A stretch of DNA of 64,000 nt, from positions 8,184,001-8,248,000 of the forward strand of contig NC_135260.1 in assembly GCF_964204865.1 (NCBI RefSeq), given 5' to 3'. Below, one piece after another: positions 9,999 through 37,400 of the stretch (its first letter is position 1; every line of letters starts with the position of its first letter). The translations under genes were made by a program, and so were the position numbers. The stretch is from Styela clava. Lineage: Eukaryota. The notes under the pieces are model-generated. The model was not told the origin of the DNA. It made no database searches and saw nothing but the letters and a program-made list of their open reading frames with translations.

Positions 9999-12683
9999 AT
10001 GCCGCAAACGGTTATGCCAAAGTACAAAACGTCCTCAGATGGACTTATGATGTCAGAATTTCCTAAGATCAAGCAAACTGCAACGAGAATAGGTATGTAG
10101 TTTTCCTTGTTTGGAAATTATGTTCCTGCAATGCAAATGTGAATACTGCTTTGAAGGTCTTTTTTTATATAATCACTGTTCGCACCTTCGCGCTTAATGC
10201 GAAATAACAAATACTAATAAAGTTTTTGCTTTATATTATTATAGGCGATCCAAATGATGCGACCTACAGATTAGCTAGTTTTTCTTCATATCTCAACGTA
10301 CCAATACAGCCGAAAATTCTCGCCAAAGCCGGATTTTACTACACGGGACAAGACGATATCACGCGTTGCTTTAGATGTGGATCACGTGTAAGGAACTGGG
10401 AGAAAGACGACAATCCCTGTGATTCAAAATATCACGAACAAGACTGTACAATAAATAGACAAAGACCAACAGGTACTACCGCGGTATATTTGTCGTTGAA
10501 AATATAATTTTAGATTCACCCCTTTAGATAAGTTTTTGAAATTACGCCATATTAAATATATATAATAGGCGAATATGGCGTAGATCAGTGTTTGGCAAAT
10601 AAATCAAAAAATGCGTAATGCAGGCAATTGAGTATCTTATTATAAGCTAGCCTATGAGGTCATTCATCGCACATGACTGGTGCTATTTTTTAGTATGTTG
10701 CGAAATTGTCCTTGGAATGCTAGCCTATTATCAACTGCGTTCCTGGAAGCTTAACATCCGTTGGTACAACTTTACATTTGAATTACTTCCTTGTATTTTA
10801 GATATGCCAACCGCTGAGCAACAGTCGGTTTCTGCTACTCGTACACTTTCGTCGAATTCGGGTCAAACGAATACATTGAATGCGATGGAATCGAATGCTC
10901 ACGAGGTTATTTTTTATTTTTTGAAGCCGAGGGAATTTTAGTTTCATTGTGGCGTCATGTTCGATAACCAATGCTATAAGCATAAATGATCATGCGGTCA
11001 TAACCGAATTTCCGATTCATGTCGAAATCTCAATCACTCTTCCGGGAAATTGTGCAACTGGGAAAATTTTAAATTCGCTGTCACTAAAATTTAATATATT
11101 TCCCTATTCAATTTTATTGTGTTAGTTTCATAAGAAACACATTACAGATTACCCACGCATTATATAAAATATTACGGGATTTCATTTTGACTCAAATTTA
11201 TCCACAGTTCAGTTCGGGTGCGGGAGCAACAAATCAAGAACAATTGTTTGAGACGTTCAATCTGGACCATCCAATAAACCCTCATATGAGAAATGAAGAC
11301 GTTAGAATGTCTACTTTTCGAGACAGAGGAAACTGGCAAGTTCGGAGAATACATGCAACTCCGGAACAACTTGCAAAAGCAGGCTTTTTCTATTTGGGTA
11401 AGCAACATCTTTGAGCCTCGTGCACCGTAATGTTTAAACATAGATAACAATGAATGCATATACAGTATGCTAAACCTGATCATATTTTAGCGATTTAAAA
11501 GAAAATTTCAAGACGAGAGTTAATAAAATCTTACCTAAGGTTATCGATAATGTCATTTAGTATTTGGAAAATATTTTTTATTTGAACTTGCAGGTGAAGA
11601 AGATAAAGTGAAGTGTTTTTACTGCAATGGAGGTCTGTGCGATTGGGAATATAACGACGATCCATGGATAGAGCATGCCAAGTGGTATCCCCAGTAAGTT
11701 AATAAAGAACATTTTCACAACTTCAATTTCCAAAATGTCAACGAATTCATGTCAATTTTTACTTTTTCTTTAAAGTTGTGAGTTTACATTGCATCACAAG
11801 GGACCTGCATTTATAACAGATGTAACTTCACAATTTCCAAACTTAAATCGGTCTACAACAACTTCGTACGATATTCCACCTCCTGGAGCACACGTGGTAT
11901 ACCAGAATTACGGAAGTTGGATTCCGCCACGTCGAAATGGATTCTCTCGTTCTCGCGGCGCCGAAATTATGGATCCGAGAGAAGAAGACAAAAAAAGAGA
12001 AGTTTTGATAGAATCGGCACTAGGTAGTTCTGAATTAATTAAACAAGCACGTGATATGGGATTCACAAACGAAAAACTTCGAAGAGCATTACAAAAGTAA
12101 GTCACAGTTCTGAATAAAATTGTAATATCAACAATCTTGTACGGTTTCATATTTGAATATCGAAATGAACGTTATGTTAGGAATATTGCGTATTGGTAAA
12201 AAAAAAAAAAGAGAAATTATCGAGATTCGTCAGATCATGTTTTCACTACGAAAAAGTAGTTCTCATTATTTTTTGGAAATGCCATAATGTAGGTTAAATA
12301 TTTTGTTTTCATTCCAATAATTTAAAATCTATTCTAGACAATACCAAGTCAAAGAGAGAAATTTTTGCAATATCGACGAAGTACTGGTAACTATTGGCAA
12401 TTTAGAAGACGAAGAACATGTTTCAACGAGAACAAATCACCCATCCACAAATCAAAATTCAACTAACACAACTCTCATGCCTAGTAATCCTGAAGATCGA
12501 GAAAATCGATTAAAACAACTTGAAGAAGAGAAAAAATGCAAAATATGTTTAGATGAAGAAGCAAATGTTGTTTTCGTACCATGTGGACATTTATCTACAT
12601 GTGTATCTTGTGCACAAAGAGTATCAAATTGTCCAATATGCCGGTCGTACGTTCGACAAAAGATCAAAACATACATTTCTTGA
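9999..12683 (+). CDS. Inhibitor of apoptosis protein (IAP/BIRC family) copy A: BIR1 (non-canonical)-BIR2-UBA-like-RING, 7 exons
   Basis: Exons in frame across GT-AG introns: 9999-10092, 10245-10472, 10802-10905, 11208-11397, 11594-11693, 11776-12096, 12338-12683. BIR motifs [19 protein letters not shown] and [45 protein letters not shown]; ARDMGF (UBA-like); C-terminal [45 protein letters not shown]. Confidence 0.93.
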
Positions 12684-27430: not shown

Positions 27431-28163
27431 GATGTAGCCTACACTGTACAGGCTATTATGGTAAGCTATGACTAAGCAGTATCTACTGTTTCCGTCAAAT
27501 TCAGAGTGGTGAACATCCGACTGTGGAAATCTGATTCAACTGCAGGCATCGGAATTTTCGCAAAAATTTATCTTGGCAGTTTAGGAAAAAAAGGTGGTAG
27601 AAAATTATCATCCTCGCCAAGCGATATTTCCACGACAATACAAATCTTACTTTGTTCCAGCAGTTCAATACGACACTTCAATGTAGGATTTTTAATTTAA
27701 CGAGACGAATATCCATCATCATTCTGCAATAAAAAGGTGGGTTTTTCTGTATTATAAATGTAAAGTCGATCCTTCCACGCGGACTACAACCTACACCGAA
27801 AACAAGCATTCTTGCAATCGCAGAGTTTATTTTGAGCCTGGTGCAGACTGGAACGTATTAATCGTTCACTGAAGCGTGACAAAATAAGTCTGTTTTCGAA
27901 TAACGCGATCGTCGCGTATAGAAGCGTATGGCAAATTTGTTAGGCTCAGTGAATTGATCGAAGTGTACGATTAAGCTCAGAGAAATCGTGTGAATAAGTA
28001 TCGGAAGTTATGGAATTTTAGTATACAGGTGTCGTTGATACACTTCAGTTTATTATTGTCGCACTACAGAAGGTTTAACACGTATTCTATAGCTTTCAAT
28101 AGTGAAAATCCTCAGACATATGTGTGAAACGACTCCTCGCTTATAACCCCGGCTGGTTACCGC

Positions 28164-28174
28164 GGGGATTCCCC
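28164..28174. promoter_or_regulatory. NF-kB site upstream of IAP copy B
   Basis: GGGGATTCCCC, a perfect symmetric kB consensus, about 240 bp upstream of the ATG at 28413; AP-1 site TGACTCA at 28335-28341. Confidence 0.55.
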
Positions 28175-28412
28175 TGGTAGTGCAGAACATTTGAAGGCAG
28201 TTGAAATCACGATAAACATAATGGAATAGCCTATAGGCACGTAATGTTTACTATTTTCTTTTACCACTTTCATTTACTATTTCGCAATTGAGTAATTCTT
28301 ATTTGACAACGCGCGCGAGCACAGATGTGGTAAATGACTCATACAGTATTATTAAAATCTGTAGTTCTACGCATAGCCACAGTTTAATTTGTTGACCAGG
28401 ATAAACATAGAA

Positions 28413-31400
28413 ATGCCTGATGAAGTTTTAAGCCAGCATCGAGATGAAAATATAGCTGACGATGGAAATACGTGTAACGATCCACGGGCTGTTAACAACG
28501 ATTTACCGTATATAAATTTCGGTATGTATACATGGACTGTTTTTTTGTGTTGAATATTGATCTTTATTCAAAGCAAGGACCCAAATAACAATTTCGACAG
28601 TAGCCTATATAAAACTAGCTCAGTAATAGAGTTACCACACGCCAGCCAAGTCGCAATCTTTGTACTATTGAGCCGCGTAAGAAATCGTTGCGACTGTGAT
28701 ATCGCTGTGTCCTTCTTCCTCATATAAATATTTAGGTAGTAGCTACTCACTTTCAACACAGATCAATGCCAGTTCAATGAATATCCATCTCAGACCAGTG
28801 ACTATCACTATCATATACCAAAACATTGCCGTTTCCGGCCATACAAGATATTTTACGTGTCATCGTCCTTTGAGCTGTTACCGGTATCCTGTTAGTGTGG
28901 CACGTCAGGTACAAAAATCGGTTGCCGAGGTGGTGGACTCAATTCTATTTTGTATTGTGAAGTACTTTACGGTTATGCAGACCTACTTAGTGTTGTTCTG
29001 AACCATATGTTGACTATCTCGATTAGAATCTGACAAAAGCTGGTACTCTAGAAGTGTTCATTTACTATATACAGAATATTATATTCTATAAACGACCAGA
29101 CTAGATTCAGTGTCAATTTAGTTTTATATATTTAACGCAGGAAATCCAGACAGAGAAGATGATCGCCTTGCAACTTTCAGAGACTTTCCACAACATCGTG
29201 ATTCTGCTTTACCACGCGATCTTGCCAACGCCGGATTCTTTTTTACGGGAGTGGGAGATGTTGTGAAATGCTTCAGGTAACGACAATACAAATTTACTGT
29301 TCTGTATATACCGGTATATCAACAAAATAAAAAACAGGTATATGACAAATAGCTGTTACGGACATTTTATGCGTGCTGTGCCTGTTCTATTGTCGTCACC
29401 TCGAAGCTCTACATAAGCCTCCTAAAGTAAGCTGTTTGTCGTTATCAGGCTGGCAATCTGAACATCATCAGAGAACAGTCGGTTGATCAATGTCAGGTCG
29501 TTAGTCATTAAAAAGAACATATTTAGCTTCACCTTCAAAACTCCTCGGATTTTCCCCTGAATTGTTGTTTGTTCTAACTGAATGTTAATACTGCCAGTTG
29601 GTCTATTTCAAATTGTACCATATATATAAGCAAAATGTTGCTTACAATATACCGCCATTAAAGTTATGGTTTTCGCTTCCCTTAGCGTTTGAGCGGCAGA
29701 AGATATTGCTTCACTGATCAAATCTCAATACGATGAATTAGAATACAATATTGCATGACAGTTAAACTAAATCTAAACAAACAGGATTAATTAAATTCTT
29801 TTCTCGTGTACGCGCACAATATGTAGTCACAATCTATAAGTGACGTTTTCCTGGCAATGATAAGTATGATTGATTTTGTTGTGAAAATATTTTTATTTGT
29901 TTATCTATTTGAATCATTGCGCGGGAAAATGCCGTCCTGTTGATTTATTTTAGTCGCTGATATTTATCACGAAATGTTAACATAAATCTTCGTGTGTCTG
30001 TACCTAATGAGTTGTTGTGATGGTACCATTAATTACAGACAATCCATTTGTCATTGTAAGTGACTCTGTGAAACGAGTAATAATGAAACGTCGCGTCGAA
30101 CGATTTACGTTGCGATTCCTTGGTGTACATCCCTCCGTACGCTGTGATGCAATCTGGGGTCGGTTAATCACTTGCTTAATCCGCAATGAACATCTATACC
30201 TCGATTATTGCTTCATTATTTTATCGTTATTATATTTTCATATAATAATTACGTGAAAACAAAACTAAAAACTATTACTGTAGTGATTGACTTATTATTT
30301 CATTACATTTTACCGGTACTGAAGTGGGACCCGTTTAGATGTTTCTCAACTACATCAATTAGAGTCAGTTGCAGTTGAAAATCAAGTATGATTTGCCATG
30401 TGTGATAGATAAAACGTAACTCTCTACCAATTGCAGGATGATTGTACGCTGAAGGACTAATAGTATTTCTTGGTAGGATCAATTGCTTGATCTTGTGCTG
30501 GGCTATTAAAGTGGTAACCTACTTTTCCTATCGTCAGTTCACTCTTTTGTTTGTGCACTTCGACGACGGAGATATGCACCGACTTTGAGAATAGAATCCC
30601 ACAACATGAGAGATACCGATGAATTGAATTTTCAGCGAAGTCAACTACAGCGGAACTCAGTTGTTTTAGTAAATTACGAATGTTCTAAAAAGAGCCTTAA
30701 AGGTGTTGTTAAAGTTGCCAACTTCGTGTATGAAAAACGAGTTTTTGCGAGAGTAACTTTTGATAGTTGGGAAACATGGACTGATGTCGATGGTACCTGG
30801 AGCAAACCTGGGGATCCAGAATGGAAAACTGACATCTTTGCATTCAGGCTGTTTTTGCCAAAGTTATTTAACGCAAAGAAAACCGAGTTTGCCGTTTGCT
30901 GCAGTCAATGTGGAATAGACTACTGGGACAACAACGATATGGCTAACTACGTCACTCTTATCCCGAGATATTTGATCAATAATCTTGTGTATATTCCCAA
31001 GTTGAGAAGACAAAAAATTAGTTACACCACATTGACAAAGAAGAGAAAAAAAAAGTTGGATGGAAGTAGAGAAACAAAAAATCCACGAATAAAATTTGCC
31101 AATTACGTGAAGTCATTGAAAAAGTAGAAAATTGGCTCACGCGCGTTTATGTGGATAATTTATTTTTATGATTGAATTTATTCCATTGTATCATATGTCT
31201 CTCATGATATTGGTATTTGATGCAGCTTATAAACTTGTTGTATTCGGCAATATATCCGATTGATATATTTTCTCGCTCGTGTTTGTGTCTTCTACTTAAC
31301 GCCTTTTTTCTATAATTTTCTGTAAATATGAAATAAATATTCTTGCAGGTATTTTAAATCTTATCATGGATAAAATCAAGTACAGGTTGAATTGGAATTG

Positions 31401-34400
31401 TTACAGAGCTCATGTAGATCGCAACATTACGTCGTATGTTTTTCAACATTTTATAGTTTGACAATATTCCGTTATGTACCACCTATGGACGAACATAGGC
31501 TACGTTATAAACAAACACTTACACCAGAGGACGGCAACCTGTTGTCGCTTGCGGGCCAAAAATAAAGGTTGCAAGTCATTTGCGGGCGCACATATTTTTA
31601 ACAAAGTTGAAAATCGAATGGATGACCGATGAATCACATTTTATCACACAGATCAGAAGTTAAATTTTAAGCAGCGCGCGAAGACTGACCATTTGAATAT
31701 TTTTTGCGCCATTAAACCATTTGCACTTAGCATCAACTTTTCTGCGTTTTGTTGCTATTTGTCTAAATTATAATTAAATTATAGGCTCATTAAACGAGTA
31801 ATTGTGAATTATATACTTATTACGTTATAATATAATTTAGTCACGTAAAACACGTAATTTCGTTTGCGTAAAGACTATATTCGACAAAACAGCTATAATT
31901 TGTTACATAATTCAGTGAAGCGTCGCGGGCCGGATTATTTTGCTCCGCGGGCCGTAGGTTGCCGACACCTGACTTACATCATTGAGATAACTAAAGTTTC
32001 ACCTTCCTCTATGCCTCAAGTTGATCAAGAAAAATTCTTTTTTTTTTTTAATTGGAAAGCTCTCTTGAAATGACCGTTGATTAGATATCCCTCTCGGACC
32101 CCACTCAGACCATCAGTTACCCAAGTCGCTTCTGGTTTAATCTATACTGAGTCTACCTCGGCCTCGTTCGGAACGAAGTAAGTAGTAAAGTCTTTCTGAA
32201 AAACCTTATCAATTCACTTTCTTATGCAGCTGTGGGAATTGCGTAGAGCGTATGACAAGACGTGAAGATCCACGAGATAGAAGATTCCATCGAGATGATT
32301 GTTTACATCGTAATGATCTCGATGAGAGAAACGTACCTGCAACTTGTAAGTTCCTATTTCACGAATTTGCTGAAACGAGAGAAAATCGCTGTGTTCTTTA
32401 AATCACCTCTAATGTACACTAATTGGCAGTACACATTTCGCGTAGTTGCTCCAAAAATCGAACATGGCAGCCATATAAACTTATACAGAAAAGGCAATTC
32501 AATTAGCGATTGTTTTCATATATCCACCCGTACTCTATCTAATGTCGCTGATCATTCTTTCGCATCGATTAAAACTGATACTATATGATATAGCTATAAT
32601 GATTCTTAATTGGCGACTCATTATGGGAAACGATATGTATCATATCATTGAAACTTTTTTGATTTTTTTTTTCTTGCTTGCTGTGATAATATGCGAATTC
32701 GACGTTTTTTTTATTGGCGAATTGGTAGGTGTTAGTATTTCGTAGAAATGGTTTACTTTAACTAACTTTTTCTACAGATCCACCTACCGCGTTACCATTG
32801 CATAATTTTTTGAGAAACGGAGGTCTGAGTTCTTCGGCAAACACAATTCAACCTACTAGAGAGAGAAACGAAATATCTGAACCAATGCAGCAGGACGAAG
32901 AAATATTTGTTATTCCTCAACAACCTTCGCAGCCGAGCTGTGACGTCGAACCACAAGATCAAGCTGCGGAAGAGCAGGTATTGTAACTTTATTTATCAAG
33001 ACTTAAATATGCCCGCCTTCAAAGGTAGGTAGACGATGGTTGAAATTGAAACAACCGCAACATTTCCGTGGCCGAGCTTCTGTCAAGTTTTTTATATGTT
33101 TGTAATAGGAAGTACATGTCCGGCTCAGAATCCACTGATGTCACATGCTCACACCACAACGTACCATGCGTGAAATCTTGTCGACGACAGTCGTATTCCT
33201 CTGTAGATATCAATTGTATTTTCTAATAATATTCCATCGTGAAAAGTCTATGACAATCGAAACTTCTACATACCTGGCTCATAGGAAACTTGACGTGAAA
33301 TCGTTACAACAATGTGTGTGAAAATATCTAAATATTCAGGAAATTTTTCTATATTCCCCTACTGGTCTTTATAGGGTATTTATCGTATAGTACAAAGGTT
33401 GGAGAATTCAGAATGAAGTTTATACCAAGCAGACTATAAGCCAATAACTCAATAAGATTTCAATTATGAATAATCGGAAATGTCTCTCAATGAAATCGAC
33501 ACCACAAAGAATAAACTGCTGATTCAGTAGATGTGGTCAATAGATCTATGCCGCTGTACTATTAATATTGCATGAGCATTACATGGGCCCCGAAATAGTA
33601 TTTTTTTAGGTTCCGAATGCAAACGCTGAAATAATTCAGGCTTATCATCTTTGGTAGCATCGATAGCCGATTTGATAAATCGAATTTAGAATTTCTTGAA
33701 TTTTGTTCTCTTTGTTTTATTCTTTTTTATATTAATACTATTCGGTTTTATTTATGAGCATCATATTAATGGGATTTAAATTGACTGCCATTTCAGCCCG
33801 CAGATCCAGAACCTCAAGGCGCAGCAGTGGGAGCTTCTAGCAGTGCACCCGAAGAGGAGATATTTCCCGCTTTTGAGTGTTCGGATCCATTTCATGCTCA
33901 CATGGCTGATCCACGAGAGAGACTTCGAACATTTCAAGGAAATTGGCAAGCAAATATAGGCGCGACTCCGCAGAATATTGCGGACGCTGGTTTCTATTAT
34001 ACAAGTAGGTTATGATATACGTTGCTCCGGAAGTACTTATATAAAATTCACTGTGACACATCCATGTTTCTAACGGTTCTTACGAAAAATTTATTGTATC
34101 CTTATTCATTATATTTTGAGAGATATTTTATGTAAAATTTTACCGAATAAAATGTCGTAAATTTTCAGCCTAAATTGCAATGTTTCTGCAAAATAAATAT
34201 ATTAGTATGTATCGAAATCAAATCAGAGGGCAAAGTGGTATTTATTATATCGGACCTATTTATATAGATGTCCCTTAGTATAATTCTTTTTTTATTCATT
34301 TACCATGTATATCCAATATAATATTTCATGAGTCAGTATATAGGTACAACTTAGGTTGTTGTTAAGCCTATTTTAAACCTGGCACTCTATGATTTGATGG

Positions 34401-37400
34401 TTCTGCAGTACGGAAGATGAAACGTTGAATTTGTGTGGGCAGCTTATGATGATAACCACATGGACTGTCACAAAATTGCGCCAATATAACATACATTTGA
34501 AAACTATTAAACATAGTCAAATCATCAGGAAGAGTTTGCGTCATTGAAATTTTATTTTCTATCCATGATAATAAGTACTTTAACCCAAAGTTATATTCCT
34601 ATAAAGCGACATAAATTTCATTATGGTCATAAGCAAAGCTATCCAGTTTGTATGTATCTCCGTCACTTCACTTCTAAATTATACGTGGTTTAATATGGCA
34701 ACTAAATCATTATTGTGATTGGAAATTCGCCAGCACAATATGTTCTATTTCCCTTTAGAAAGATGTCTTTTCAACTAATATCTAATTCTAATATGTTTAC
34801 GTATAGATGAGAGGGACCGTGTGACATGTTGGTACTGCAATGGTGGGCTTGAAAATTGGGAACGTGATGACGATCCTTGGATAGAGCATGCAAAATGGTT
34901 TCCACAGTAAGTGACATTTTCCATAAGTTTTATGAAAATCGCCATTGCGTTTGCCTAGCCCTAGGGCCTAAGGAGAAATGCAAATATGAAATTGAAACTA
35001 AGCAATTACCGACATCGTGTACTGGCCCTGAACCAATCAAATTTACATGATGGTGCAATTTTTCTCAGAGAGGCTGGGGGAAATTTGAAGAAGGAAATGA
35101 AAGTCATGATCTTTTGAAGCTCATGGCGAATGCATCGTTATCTACCTAAAATTTGAAGCGGCTGTTGTTAGTTGATAAACCAATGACGTGCAATTCCACA
35201 TTACCATACCTAAAGATACTAAACATTCTGTTGTTGAGTTGCACCTTGAAACGTTTTGAGAGGCATATTTAGAGATGCTGATGATATAACAATACTATTA
35301 TTTATTCCCACGAGCGAGTTGCACTGAATGGTATTAATTATTACTGTCATAATGCTCTGAAACGTGATTTGAAACTTCACAAATTGCCGTGACATCATTC
35401 ACCATTTTCATATACGTAAACTTGTATTAAATTTAGACGTTGGAATCAGTCGAAGACTGTAATTAAGCGTTTCTTTTACTTATACAGTTGCGAATTTCTC
35501 TTACGTCACAAAGGTCCAGACTTCGTGGGTGCAATTGCTGAGCAATTTCCTGATCTTCCGAGACCGAATAACGATCCTGCTCACCAGCCGACTGTCGCGG
35601 TCAATCCGTTACCTGAACCCCCACCACCTCCACCCGAAAACAACCCCCTTGCGCCTCCTCGGCCTCGACCACCTGCCGATGTTGGCCCTCGACGTGTTCC
35701 AGGTCCTCGACGTAACCAAATAAATTCAACGTTTATCAATATCGTAAATGGGCAGATAATGGGAGGAATGCCGCCTAATGTTGTATACAACAATAACCCA
35801 GAAGGTGGATTTACTATAAATATACACAGACATGGAGCTGGAGGAGCTACAAGAACGTAAGTTAGTTTTGAACAAAGAAAATTATCTCTTTAAACATGCT
35901 CGAATATTGCCGCGTACTTTGTTGTTCTTCCGAGCACAGGATTCTAGAAAAGCTTTGAGGTGGCCGACGTTTCCAAATGCTGGGAATAATATAATACCCA
36001 TAGAAAAAATATGGCATTAGCCGCCGAATTTGAAGTCTTCTAGTTGCTTTACAGAAACATGCAATTTATAATATTATTGGAAATGACATATTTGGTTGAT
36101 TATAGGTAGAAATGGGGTAACAGATATTGACTAAAAATTGTTTCAGCCTACATCCAAGCCCCTAAAACGACTGATGTAATTCCGACTATTTTTTGGTTTA
36201 TTATTATTTTTTTTCTATTAAATTTTTCATGTGACATGTCAGATTTCACTCGCTTGTACCAAGCGGACATGGATCGTTTTGTTCTTGTTAAAAATAGCCC
36301 TTCTCGGCTACTGATGGATCAATCGAATGTAAATTTCCTAAAAATGAATACAGTATCTTAATAGCTTATACATTCTTTGCAAATTTTCTCGTAGTCATAA
36401 TTTATGATGCCGATTATTCAGTCATTCAAAGCCCATTTTTATTTATTTGACCCTCATGTCCATATATTTATTTATCGCCCCCTTTTCCCTTTTATAGAGT
36501 CGTTCGAGGAACGAATAATGTCAGAATAGTGCAAACAGGGGGAGGTGGAAGACGACTTGGACGACGGCAGCAACAGCGGCAAGCGCCGGAATTCGTCGAT
36601 CCAGGCCAAGATGCTGAACGACATCAACAAACTGTTGATAATGCAATGACCAATTCACCTCTTGTAACTAGCGCTCGAAATATGGGTTTTACGGACGATG
36701 TAATCCGTGTGGTTTTGTTAAGGTAAGTTATGTACACACTCGGTTTCCTCGCATGAGGAATCATGAGCATCCAAATATCTTTATCATGAAAATAAGTCGC
36801 ATTGGGTAATTTTGAGTATTTAGTTGTCGTGGGTATTCAATTGCGACGTTTCCGTTACGCTTATTGTACAGTACAGTACACTAGGTAGTAGTAGTACAGT
36901 TCAAGGACAATGTATTTCGAGTATGTTTTGGTTTATAATGACGAGTTTCACTTATTAATAATGAGGATATCCGTCTAAATTTCGTTGTATAATCGGTTAA
37001 TATTGGCAAAATGATCCCACTAATAACCCCCACTTTGCAGCAAGTGTCGAGCTGGAGGCGGAATATACGACAATATTGAAGATTTTGTGGAAGCTTTGAC
37101 AGAATACCAGACAGAAGCTGCAAGACTGGATGAAAATCCGGCTCCTCCAGTTGACCCACCACCAGAGGGTGCAGCGGGAACTTCACAGTCTGGAGAAGGG
37201 GAAGGTGCATCTTCAAGTTCTGAATCCCAGCTTCAACAATTAGAAGAAAGTCGAAATTGCAAGTTATGTCATCGTGAAAAAGCGACTATTGTACTTATGC
37301 CATGTGCCCACTTGGCTGCGTGTGCAACCTGTGCTGAACGGAACATCAGAGTGTGCCCTGTGTGTAGGCAGATGGTGACGGAAACCATACGCTCTTTTAT

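What the first reader, a model, noticed from the sequence alone, without database searches (positions are those of the whole stretch)
29277..32229. Glycogen-binding CBM21 gene nested sense-strand inside an intron that splits an IAP BIR domain
Seen: IAP copy B BIR1 is interrupted within CFS|C by a 2.95-kb intron holding an intact CBM21 ORF on the same strand with its own AATAAA. IAP copy A encodes the same BIR1 in one exon with no intron here, while the other intron positions are largely shared. Inference: the intron was gained together with the nested gene or lost from copy A. Use of the nested poly(A) site would truncate IAP-B transcripts mid-BIR1, which could couple or make mutually exclusive the expression of an apoptosis regulator and a glycogen/PP1 regulator.
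Basis: partly seen in the sequence, partly recalled or inferred. Interest (0 to 1): 0.75.

Follow-up and report, generated by a model that had tools for sequence, protein, structure and literature searches.

The report
Glycogen-binding gene inside an IAP intron
In the sea squirt Styela clava, an old intron that splits an apoptosis-inhibitor gene has been enlarged and now holds a small, intact, same-strand gene for a glycogen-binding domain; this is a well-documented but ordinary case of one gene nested in another.

Summary
Spliced RNA contigs from three studies join 29276 to 32230 (GT..AG, 2,953 nt); a DNA run does not. The split falls inside the Ser codon of CFS|C in BIR1 of IAP-B. The intron holds an intact 173-codon same-strand ORF (30606-31127) with a complete CBM21 domain (Pfam E 7e-23; PDB PPP1R3C E 1e-19).

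The intron is ancestral. All 8 other paralogs for which both BIR1 halves were found have a phase-2 intron at the same codon, 91-774 nt long. Copy A lost it precisely. IAP-B's intron was enlarged by the CBM21 gene and a high-copy repeat.

The nested gene is old and unique: 39% identity to its nearest paralog, single-copy DNA, no close relative in public proteins. It lacks the N-terminal PP1-binding region of PPP1R3 proteins, so "PP1 regulator" is unsupported.

RNA over it is weak, at 1-9% of host depth. It exceeds intron background clearly in only one of three runs, and its strand is unknown. No truncated or chimeric IAP transcript was seen, so coupling remains speculation. The genome is Styela clava. 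This scan has also noted CBM21 genes nested in another intron of this genome (s1-807457). Ordinary host/nested pair; interest low to moderate.

The parts
28413..28521 (+). IAP-B first coding exon part (ATG at 28413, donor GT after 28521, phase 1)
   Evidence: The loose end of the spliced RNA contigs before 29140 (table 7) reads the same as window 28491-28520. The 5' limit of the exon was not determined.
29141..29276 (+). IAP-B exon encoding the N-terminal half of BIR1; it ends in phase 2 inside the Ser codon of CFS|C
   Evidence: Pfam BIR E 6.8e-9, profile 1-40 of 70. Exon limits come from spliced contigs in 3 runs of 3 studies.
29277..32229 (+). Phase-2 GT..AG intron of 2,953 nt: an ancestral intron of this BIR1 subfamily, enlarged here
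   Evidence: The joint 29276|32230 is seen in X1, X5 and X6 and not in DNA run X10. The same position and phase occur in 8 of 8 paralogs with both halves found, with lengths 91-774 nt.
30302..31571 (.). Stretch covered by one unspliced RNA contig that spans the whole CBM21 ORF; a possible independent transcript whose strand and ends are not known
   Evidence: X1 contig of 1,245 nt at depth 14.1, against 3.5-3.9 for intron pieces upstream. The X5 piece starts at 30332, after a gap with no coverage from 29951 to 30331. The 3' end of the contig coincides with the high-copy repeat.
30606..31127 (+). Nested single-exon ORF: 173 codons plus stop. Complete CBM21 domain (about residues 3-116) followed by a basic tail
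   Evidence: Pfam CBM_21 E 7.1e-23. PDB PPP1R3C 7qf7 E 1.1e-19. Sixteen invariant columns are kept in alignment A1. None of the 7 indels of the X1 haplotype falls in it.
31332..31337 (+). AATAAA hexamer 205 nt after the stop codon
   Evidence: Sequence. It is one of 11 such hexamers on the + strand of the intron. Its use is not shown: RNA pieces end at 31343, 31422 and 31571.
31460..32011 (.). High-copy interspersed repeat (MITE-like) inside the same intron
   Evidence: Depth in the DNA run reaches about 150,000 against about 50 for the flanks. Inverted arms of 16 nt lie at 31525-31540 and 31956-31971.
32230..32345 (+). IAP-B exon encoding the C-terminal half of BIR1 (C-G-N-C...H-R-D-D-C)
   Evidence: Spliced contigs. 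It aligns to copy A and to 8 paralogs' second halves. It has no Pfam hit on its own.
32778..32977 (+). IAP-B linker exon
   Evidence: Joints 32345|32778 and 32977|33797 in 3 runs. No Pfam family.
33797..34004 (+). IAP-B exon with the N-terminal half of BIR2
   Evidence: Spliced contigs. The loose end after 34004 equals the exon that starts at 34807.
10245..10472 (+). IAP copy A exon encoding the whole of BIR1 without the intron
   Evidence: Pfam BIR E 4.2e-15, profile 1-67 of 70. The reading TGC TTT AGA TGT is uninterrupted. Splice sites are read from the sequence only.

Best explanation
This is a host/nested gene pair in Styela clava. Shown: IAP-B is a well-expressed IAP paralog whose BIR1 is split by a phase-2 intron, and the intron is removed efficiently. 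Shown: the same intron, at the same codon and phase, is present in 8 other paralogs, where it is 91-774 nt long. Inferred: it is therefore ancestral, the neighbouring copy A lost it by precise deletion, and in IAP-B it grew to 2,953 nt by insertions. Those insertions include a single-exon, same-strand CBM21 gene and a high-copy repeat. Inferred from long-term preservation: the nested gene is most likely a real protein-coding gene. It would encode a 173-residue cytosolic protein made of one complete CBM21 glycogen/starch-binding domain and a basic tail. It lacks the N-terminal PP1-docking region of PPP1R3 subunits, so it probably binds glycogen without recruiting PP1 in the canonical way. Inferred from weak evidence: it is transcribed at a low level in the sampled material, probably as its own unspliced unit starting near 30300-30330. 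Host and nested gene most likely work independently, and their adjacency is an accident of insertion into a tolerant intron. My sub-estimates: nested arrangement real 0.97; intron ancestral and lost in A 0.85-0.9; nested gene functional 0.6-0.65; independent promoter 0.5.
For: Splicing 29276|32230 is seen in 3 runs of 3 studies and is absent from the DNA run. The same intron occurs in 8 of 8 paralogs with both halves found, all reading TGY-TWY-NG|gt...ag|Y-TGY-GG. Copy A reads through without it. A, B and the L019 gene lie in one + strand array on contig C14. Their RING exons are more alike (40-48%) than they are to the C1/C13 paralogs (32-39%). The CBM21 domain is complete. The nearest paralog in the genome is only 39% identical. 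The first 2,183 nt of the intron is single copy. The frame is nevertheless open for 173 codons; 0 of 2,000 shuffles reach that length. All 16 invariant columns of alignment A1 are kept. A second haplotype (the X1 contig) carries 7 indels in 30302-31571, none of them in the ORF (P about 0.025). It also carries 3 substitutions in the ORF: one synonymous in the domain, and R>K and P>S in the tail. RNA depth in X1 steps from 3.5 to 14.1 near 30302-30326. In X5, coverage resumes at 30332 after a gap.
Against: RNA over the ORF is weak. In X5 (2.6-7.9) and X6 (2-3.2) it is about the same as other pieces of the intron (3.3-4.1). In X1 another intron reaches 8.3. All of it could therefore be host pre-mRNA. 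Contigs give no strand, no true ends and no poly(A). Contig breaks may reflect allelic variants (there is an indel at 30323) or the repeat, not transcript ends. The protein is absent from a 15-billion-protein collection that does hold its C18 paralog as a RefSeq protein, so annotators did not call it. No relative is above 48% identity, so no ortholog is known. Single-exon trees did not resolve where copy A sits. No outgroup species could be examined, so 'loss in A' rests on parsimony, position in the array and exon identities. A recently silenced gene would look the same.
Confidence: 0.6

Rival explanations
1. The CBM21 ORF is a silent or recently silenced relic. On this reading, all the RNA seen over it is unspliced or retained-intron IAP-B pre-mRNA.
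For: Depth over the ORF equals the intron background in 2 of 3 runs, and is at most 1.7-4 times background in the third. The ORF is not present in public protein sets, although a paralog from the same genome is. There is no ortholog, no promoter evidence, and only one unremarkable hexamer among 11.
Against: The sequence is 61% diverged from its closest paralog, yet it has an open frame, a full-length domain at Pfam E 7e-23, and all 16 invariant columns. That implies selection through most of its history. None of 7 indels in a second haplotype falls in the ORF. Coverage steps up or resumes at about 30302-30332 in two studies.
Confidence: 0.25
2. Expression of the two genes is coupled through one primary transcript. 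The nested mRNA would be cut out of IAP-B pre-mRNA, by spliced-leader trans-splicing to an acceptor upstream of the ATG or by use of the nested poly(A) site. Each pre-mRNA would then yield either the IAP or the CBM21 message.
For: The two genes are on the same strand. A pyrimidine tract plus AG ends at 30537, 69 nt before the ATG. Tunicates use SL trans-splicing (recalled, not tested here). Premature polyadenylation of hosts at nested genes is documented in mammals (PMC11694760 passages; PMC3192792 abstract).
Against: No joint, loose end or contig among those shown links exon 29141-29276 to the intron, or marks 30537. Bins at 29277-29411 have no intronic coverage beyond the exon edge. The X1 contig runs colinear through 30537 from 30302. 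The spliced host form dominates by 11-80 fold. Cis-splicing the exon-2 donor to 30538 would be out of frame and would meet a stop (read from the sequence). Sixty loose ends were not shown and contigs drop rare forms, so this is weak negative evidence.
Confidence: 0.1
3. The intron was created in IAP-B together with the insertion of the CBM21 gene; that is, an exon insertion that became an intron.
For: Copy A, the tandem neighbour, lacks the intron. IAP-B's intron is 4 to 32 times longer than those of the paralogs.
Against: The identical codon position and phase hold an intron, without any CBM21, in 8 of 8 other paralogs on three chromosomes. These include another member of the same C14 array.
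Confidence: 0.03

Closest known systems
Host/nested gene pairs of animals (protein-coding gene lying wholly inside an intron of another gene)
   Same: The nested gene lies wholly within one host intron, and that intron is far longer than its counterparts. Same-strand pairs are common: passages of PMC11694760 say same and opposite orientations are 'broadly similar' in mouse and human, and that such pairs involve over a tenth of genes. Interference through premature polyadenylation is a described possibility.
   Different: This is a tunicate, and the host intron interrupts the coding sequence of a zinc-binding BIR fold. Neither interference nor independent transcription has been demonstrated.
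PPP1R3 glycogen-targeting subunits of protein phosphatase 1 (PPP1R3C/PTG, PPP1R3B/GL, PPP1R3A/GM)
   Same: The CBM21 domain aligns end to end with the solved domains of PPP1R3C (7qf7, E 1.1e-19), PPP1R3B (2eef) and PPP1R3A (2m83). The W-D-N-N...N-Y block and the V-x-N...K block are kept.
   Different: Only about 14-20 residues precede the domain. The region holding K-K-x-V-x-F-A-D in fish PPP1R3C, in P0008 and in this genome's own canonical gene (L001) is missing. In 7qm2 chain B the match starts at residue 78 of 200. The protein has a basic C-terminal tail instead. An R-I-K-F in that tail was noted by another first-stage finding and is untested.
Styela clava XP_077976316.1, 136 aa, named 'protein phosphatase 1 regulatory subunit 3B-like' by RefSeq (P0004; contig C18 of this genome)
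   Same: It is the closest paralog. It is also a short, single-exon, CBM21-only protein without the N-terminal PP1-binding region.
   Different: It is only 39-44% identical, has no basic tail, and is annotated. Whether it is nested was not examined.

Membership tests
CBM21 carbohydrate-binding module (Pfam PF03370) | Score above the curated Pfam cut-off over the full length of the profile | tested here: met
   81.4 bits against a cut-off of 28.9, E 7.1e-23, profile 2-110 of 113. The own-genome six-frame scan gives 83 bits.
CBM21 carbohydrate-binding module (Pfam PF03370) | Sequence alignment to experimentally solved CBM21 domains across the whole domain | tested here: met
   Residues 3-116 align to 7qf7_A residues 12-125 of 134, E 1.1e-19. 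The query also matches 2eef and 2m83.
CBM21 carbohydrate-binding module (Pfam PF03370) | Binds glycogen or starch | not testable with these tools
   This needs a pull-down or co-sedimentation assay with recombinant protein.
PPP1R3 glycogen-targeting subunit of PP1 | RVxF-type PP1-docking motif N-terminal to the CBM21 domain (the definition is recalled; the motif is seen in canonical rows of alignment A1) | tested here: not met
   P0003, P0005, P0008 and L001 carry K-K-x-V-x-F-A-D about 90 columns before the domain. The nested protein, P0004, P0007 and P0026 have no sequence there. RNA contigs show no upstream spliced exon.
PPP1R3 glycogen-targeting subunit of PP1 | Conserved W-D-N-N-x-x-x-N-Y block at the end of the domain (its role in glycogen synthase binding is recalled) | tested here: met
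   W107 D108 N109 N110 N114 Y115 are invariant in 8 of 8 rows. The Gly usual between them is Met here.
IAP / BIR-domain protein (host gene) | BIR domain above the Pfam cut-off | tested here: met
   The N-half exon alone gives 36.6 bits against a cut-off of 22.9. The exons were searched apart and never joined. BIR2 and RING were seen by six-frame matches.
IAP / BIR-domain protein (host gene) | Canonical zinc-ligand spacing C-x2-C-x16-H-x6-C (recalled) | tested here: not met
   BIR1 of A, B and the paralogs reads C-x2-C-x18-H-x3-C. IAP-B also lacks both Trp residues kept by the 8 paralogs. BIR1 may be a divergent or degenerate BIR; BIR2 looks canonical.
Host/nested gene pair | The nested coding sequence lies wholly within one intron that is removed from the host mRNA | tested here: met
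   The joint 29276|32230 is seen in 3 RNA runs of 3 studies. The ORF lies at 30606-31127.
Host/nested gene pair | The nested gene is transcribed as its own unit | tested here: inconclusive
   An unspliced 1,245-nt contig covers the ORF at depth 14.1, against 3.5 upstream, in X1. X5 and X6 are at background. Strand and ends are unknown.

The most novel reading that the evidence does not exclude
In a lineage that uses spliced-leader trans-splicing, the same-strand nested CBM21 message could be carved out of the IAP-B primary transcript, by trans-splicing at the acceptor ending at 30537 and cleavage after 31332. One promoter would then yield either an apoptosis inhibitor or a glycogen-binding protein, decided by competition between cis-splicing of the BIR1 intron and processing inside it. 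This would be an 'intronic operon'.
Probability: 0.08. Interest if true: 0.6.

Novelty: new member of a known kind. Interest (0 to 1): 0.3.

Why it matters
It gives a clean, RNA-supported example of three things: a conserved intron position within a gene family, precise loss of that intron in one paralog, and growth of the same intron in another paralog by capture of a whole gene. It points to a probably unannotated protein-coding gene in Styela clava. It also points to a group of short CBM21-only proteins that lack the PP1-docking region, whose role in glycogen handling is unknown. It does not support a functional link between apoptosis control and glycogen metabolism. If the coupled-processing reading were true, it would be a useful model of competition between cis- and trans-splicing.

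Tried and rejected
1. Word-indexed homolog search with the nested protein: 25 candidates, none at E <= 0.001. This is uninformative because of the word and length limits. The full HMMER scan then found 1,802 hits, all confined to the CBM21 domain and all at or below 48% identity.

2. Trees on single exons to place copy A: RING exon, 7 rows and 55 columns; BIR1 N-half, 11 rows and 40 columns. Neither was resolved (0 starred branches) and A and B sit on long branches. The loss-in-A conclusion therefore rests on position counts, the gene array and exon identities. RING exons of L011, L014, L016 and L017 were not in the fetched stretches and are missing from that tree.

3. Retrocopy or transposon origin of the nested gene. 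No terminal inverted or direct repeats flank it. There is no A-run after the hexamer. It shares no DNA similarity with 10 other CBM21 loci, and there is no second copy of the first 2,183 nt of the intron in the genome. Its origin stays unknown.

4. Hidden upstream exons with a PP1 motif. Five other ORFs in the intron have no Pfam family, and there are no RNA joints inside the intron outside the repeat.

5. A chimeric BIR-CBM21 isoform. The exon-2 donor (phase 2) joined to the acceptor at 30537 would be out of frame (read). No such joint was seen.

6. Non-coding RNA in the intron. There are no Rfam families at gathering score and no tRNAs in 28000-34500.

7. Literature. 'Styela clava' + 'inhibitor of apoptosis' gave 2 papers, neither about this family by title or abstract start (listing only). 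'Styela' + 'spliced leader' + 'trans-splicing' gave 0. 'nested gene' + 'trans-splicing' + 'Ciona' gave 3 general papers (listing only). I found nothing in print on this locus in these searches. For PMC11694760 I saw passages; for PMC3192792 I saw the outline and abstract. The supplementary tables of PMC11694760, which list host/nested pairs, were not opened.

8. Not done. I ran no structure prediction, because it would not separate a live gene from a recently dead one. 

Full report
WHAT IS THERE. The window is G000:C14:8184001-8248000 of a 377-Mb animal genome with about 35% G+C. The open frame of one of its CBM21 loci (L006, contig C18) is 100% identical over 136 residues to RefSeq XP_077976316.1 of Styela clava. 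The genome is therefore Styela clava or something indistinguishable from it. Other follow-up notes of this scan name the same species.

THE INTRON. I laid four public runs on 28700-34200 (the only read-laying run). In X1, X5 and X6, which come from three different studies, one long contig per run (2,222, 2,295 and 1,964 nt; depths 155.7, 424.5 and 94.1) joins 29276 to 32230. The joints continue 32345 to 32778 and 32977 to 33797, all with GT..AG ends. The contigs run on into an upstream exon that ends at 28521 and into a downstream exon that starts at 34807. X10 covers the whole stretch colinearly at a flat depth of about 50 and has none of these joints, so it is DNA and the other three are RNA. 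The intron is exactly 29277-32229. It lies in phase 2, inside the Ser codon of C-F-S|C. The exon before it matches Pfam BIR positions 1-40 of 70 at E 6.8e-9. The exon after it has no Pfam hit alone, but it aligns to copy A and to the second halves of eight paralogs. I searched the exons apart and did not join them at any step.

THE NESTED ORF. 30606-31127 on the + strand is a 173-codon ATG ORF. The TTG-initiated form begins at 30585, and the frame is open for 205 codons from stop to stop. It matches Pfam CBM_21 at E 7.1e-23 over profile positions 2-110 of 113. It aligns over residues 3-116 with the solved CBM21 domains of PPP1R3C, PPP1R3B and PPP1R3A. None of 2,000 shuffles of the intron gives an ORF as long, although one reached 172, so length alone is only modest evidence. 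An AATAAA lies at 31332. However, the + strand of the intron has 11 AATAAA/ATTAAA hexamers against 5.5 +/- 2.3 expected, five of them upstream of the ORF. 'Its own AATAAA' therefore carries little weight, and host transcription already passes many such sites.

INTRON GAIN OR LOSS. A six-frame Pfam BIR scan of the genome gave 60 matches. Ten of them stop at profile position 40-42, and IAP-B is one of the ten. I fetched the other nine and located both halves by tblastn. For 8 of the 9, the second half lies 91-774 nt downstream. These are L019 on C14 just upstream of the window, L012 on C13, and L013 to L018 on C1. The junctions all read TGY-TWY-NG|gt...ag|Y-TGY-GG, which is the same codon and the same phase as in IAP-B. 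For the ninth (L011), only the first half was found in the 5.3 kb available downstream. Copy A (exon 10245-10472; Pfam BIR 1-67 of 70, E 4.2e-15) reads TGC TTT AGA TGT GGA straight through, which is what a precise excision would leave. The L019 gene, A and B lie in that order on the + strand of C14. They share the BIR1-BIR2-UBA-like-RING layout and the phase-1 introns before BIR1 and within BIR2. Their RING exons are 40-48% identical to each other, against 32-39% to the C1/C13 genes. Trees built on single exons were unresolved, and no outgroup species could be searched. With nine intron-bearing genes on three chromosomes and one gene without the intron inside the array, loss in A is the economical reading; I put it at 0.85-0.9. 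None of the other introns holds a CBM21 match. The CBM21 gene therefore entered, or was retained only in, IAP-B's copy of a pre-existing intron. That intron also holds a repeat present in thousands of copies (31460-32011).

IS THE NESTED GENE ALIVE? Evidence for. Its closest paralog in the genome is 39% identical. It shares no DNA similarity with other CBM21 loci, and its DNA is single copy. Across 1.84 billion cluster representatives nothing exceeds 48% identity, and every match is confined to the domain. A sequence this diverged that still has an open frame, a full-length domain and all 16 invariant columns of an alignment with fish PPP1R3C, the genome's canonical PPP1R3 gene and short CBM21-only proteins must have been under selection for most of its history. 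A second haplotype, the X1 contig over 30302-31571, differs by 11 substitutions and 7 indels. None of the indels falls in the ORF (P about 0.025). The three ORF substitutions are one synonymous change in the domain, and R>K and P>S in the tail. Evidence against. RNA is weak. The X1 contig over the ORF has depth 14.1, against 155.7 for the host, 3.5-3.9 for intron pieces upstream and 8.3 for another intron. In X5 (2.6-7.9 against 3.3-4.1) and X6 (2-3.2 against 3.3-4.5) it is at background. Coverage steps up at 30302-30326 in X1, and resumes at 30332 after a gap in X5. That fits a start near 30300, but an indel at 30323 could equally explain the contig break. Contigs show neither strand nor ends. 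The exact protein is not in the 15-billion collection, although the C18 paralog is there as a RefSeq protein. It seems to be unannotated.

WHAT THE PROTEIN IS. It is a CBM21-only protein. Canonical relatives in alignment A1 carry K-K-x-V-x-F-A-D about 90 columns before the domain. The nested protein, like P0004 and P0007, begins about 14-20 residues before the domain. In the PP1-complex construct 7qm2_B the match starts at residue 78 of 200. RNA contigs show no spliced upstream exon, and other intron ORFs have no Pfam family. It therefore fails a defining feature of PPP1R3 subunits and should not be filed as one. An R-I-K-F in the basic tail, the subject of another first-stage note, is untested.

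COUPLING. No contig links exon 29141-29276 to intron sequence. The bin 29252-29435 is accounted for by the exon edge. No joint reaches the CBM21 region, and a cis-splice to the acceptor at 30537 would be out of frame. Interference between hosts and nested genes, including premature polyadenylation, is described in mammals (PMC11694760 passages; PMC3192792 abstract). The proposed mechanism is thus a known kind, but it is not evidenced here. Tunicates trans-splice (recalled), so processing of the nested message out of the host transcript cannot be excluded. I give it about 0.08-0.1.

VERDICT. This is an ordinary host/nested pair with a clear history: an ancestral intron, lost in A, enlarged in B. 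The nested gene is probably functional, unannotated, and encodes a CBM21-only protein. Interest 0.3.

Noticed in passing
window 31460-32011: High-copy interspersed repeat inside the IAP-B intron. Depth in the DNA run reaches about 150,000 against about 50 for the flanks. It is abundant in RNA contigs too, and has 16-nt inverted arms at 31525-31540 and 31956-31971 (MITE-like). All assemblies break there.
   Followed up: partly
G000 contigs C3, C5, C16, C18, C19 (L004, L005, L007-L010): The CBM21 family is large in this genome: 24 Pfam matches. One subfamily of 283-293-aa single-exon proteins has the domain at the N-terminus and a basic tail. It occurs on three chromosomes at 83-86% DNA identity over about 1 kb only, and as a tandem array on C5 at 94-95%. 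Another first-stage note places a CBM21 array antisense in a fibrocystin-L intron.
   Followed up: partly
L011:4553-4672 (G000:C14:8168553-8168672): Orphan copy of a BIR1 first-half exon, 38 of 40 residues like that of the L019 gene 9 kb downstream. It has an AA|GT donor, and no second half lies within the 5.3 kb downstream. It is likely a partial duplicate.
   Followed up: partly
window 32231-32302; 10376-10447; paralog loci L012-L019: The whole BIR1 subfamily has the spacing C-x2-C-x18-H-x3-C. IAP-B alone has replaced both Trp residues kept by the eight paralogs (V-E-N-W to V-E-R-M; W-H to F-H), so its BIR1 may be degenerate.
   Followed up: partly
window 30606-31127: The exact 173-residue protein is absent from a 15-billion-protein public collection, and nothing above 48% identity exists among its cluster representatives. 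The C18 paralog, by contrast, is a RefSeq protein. This is probably an unannotated gene.
   Followed up: yes
window 31080-31124: The basic C-terminal tail holds an R-I-K-F that fits the loose RVxF pattern, and both non-synonymous variants of the second haplotype fall in the tail (R>K, P>S). This is the subject of a separate first-stage note and was not tested here.
   Followed up: no
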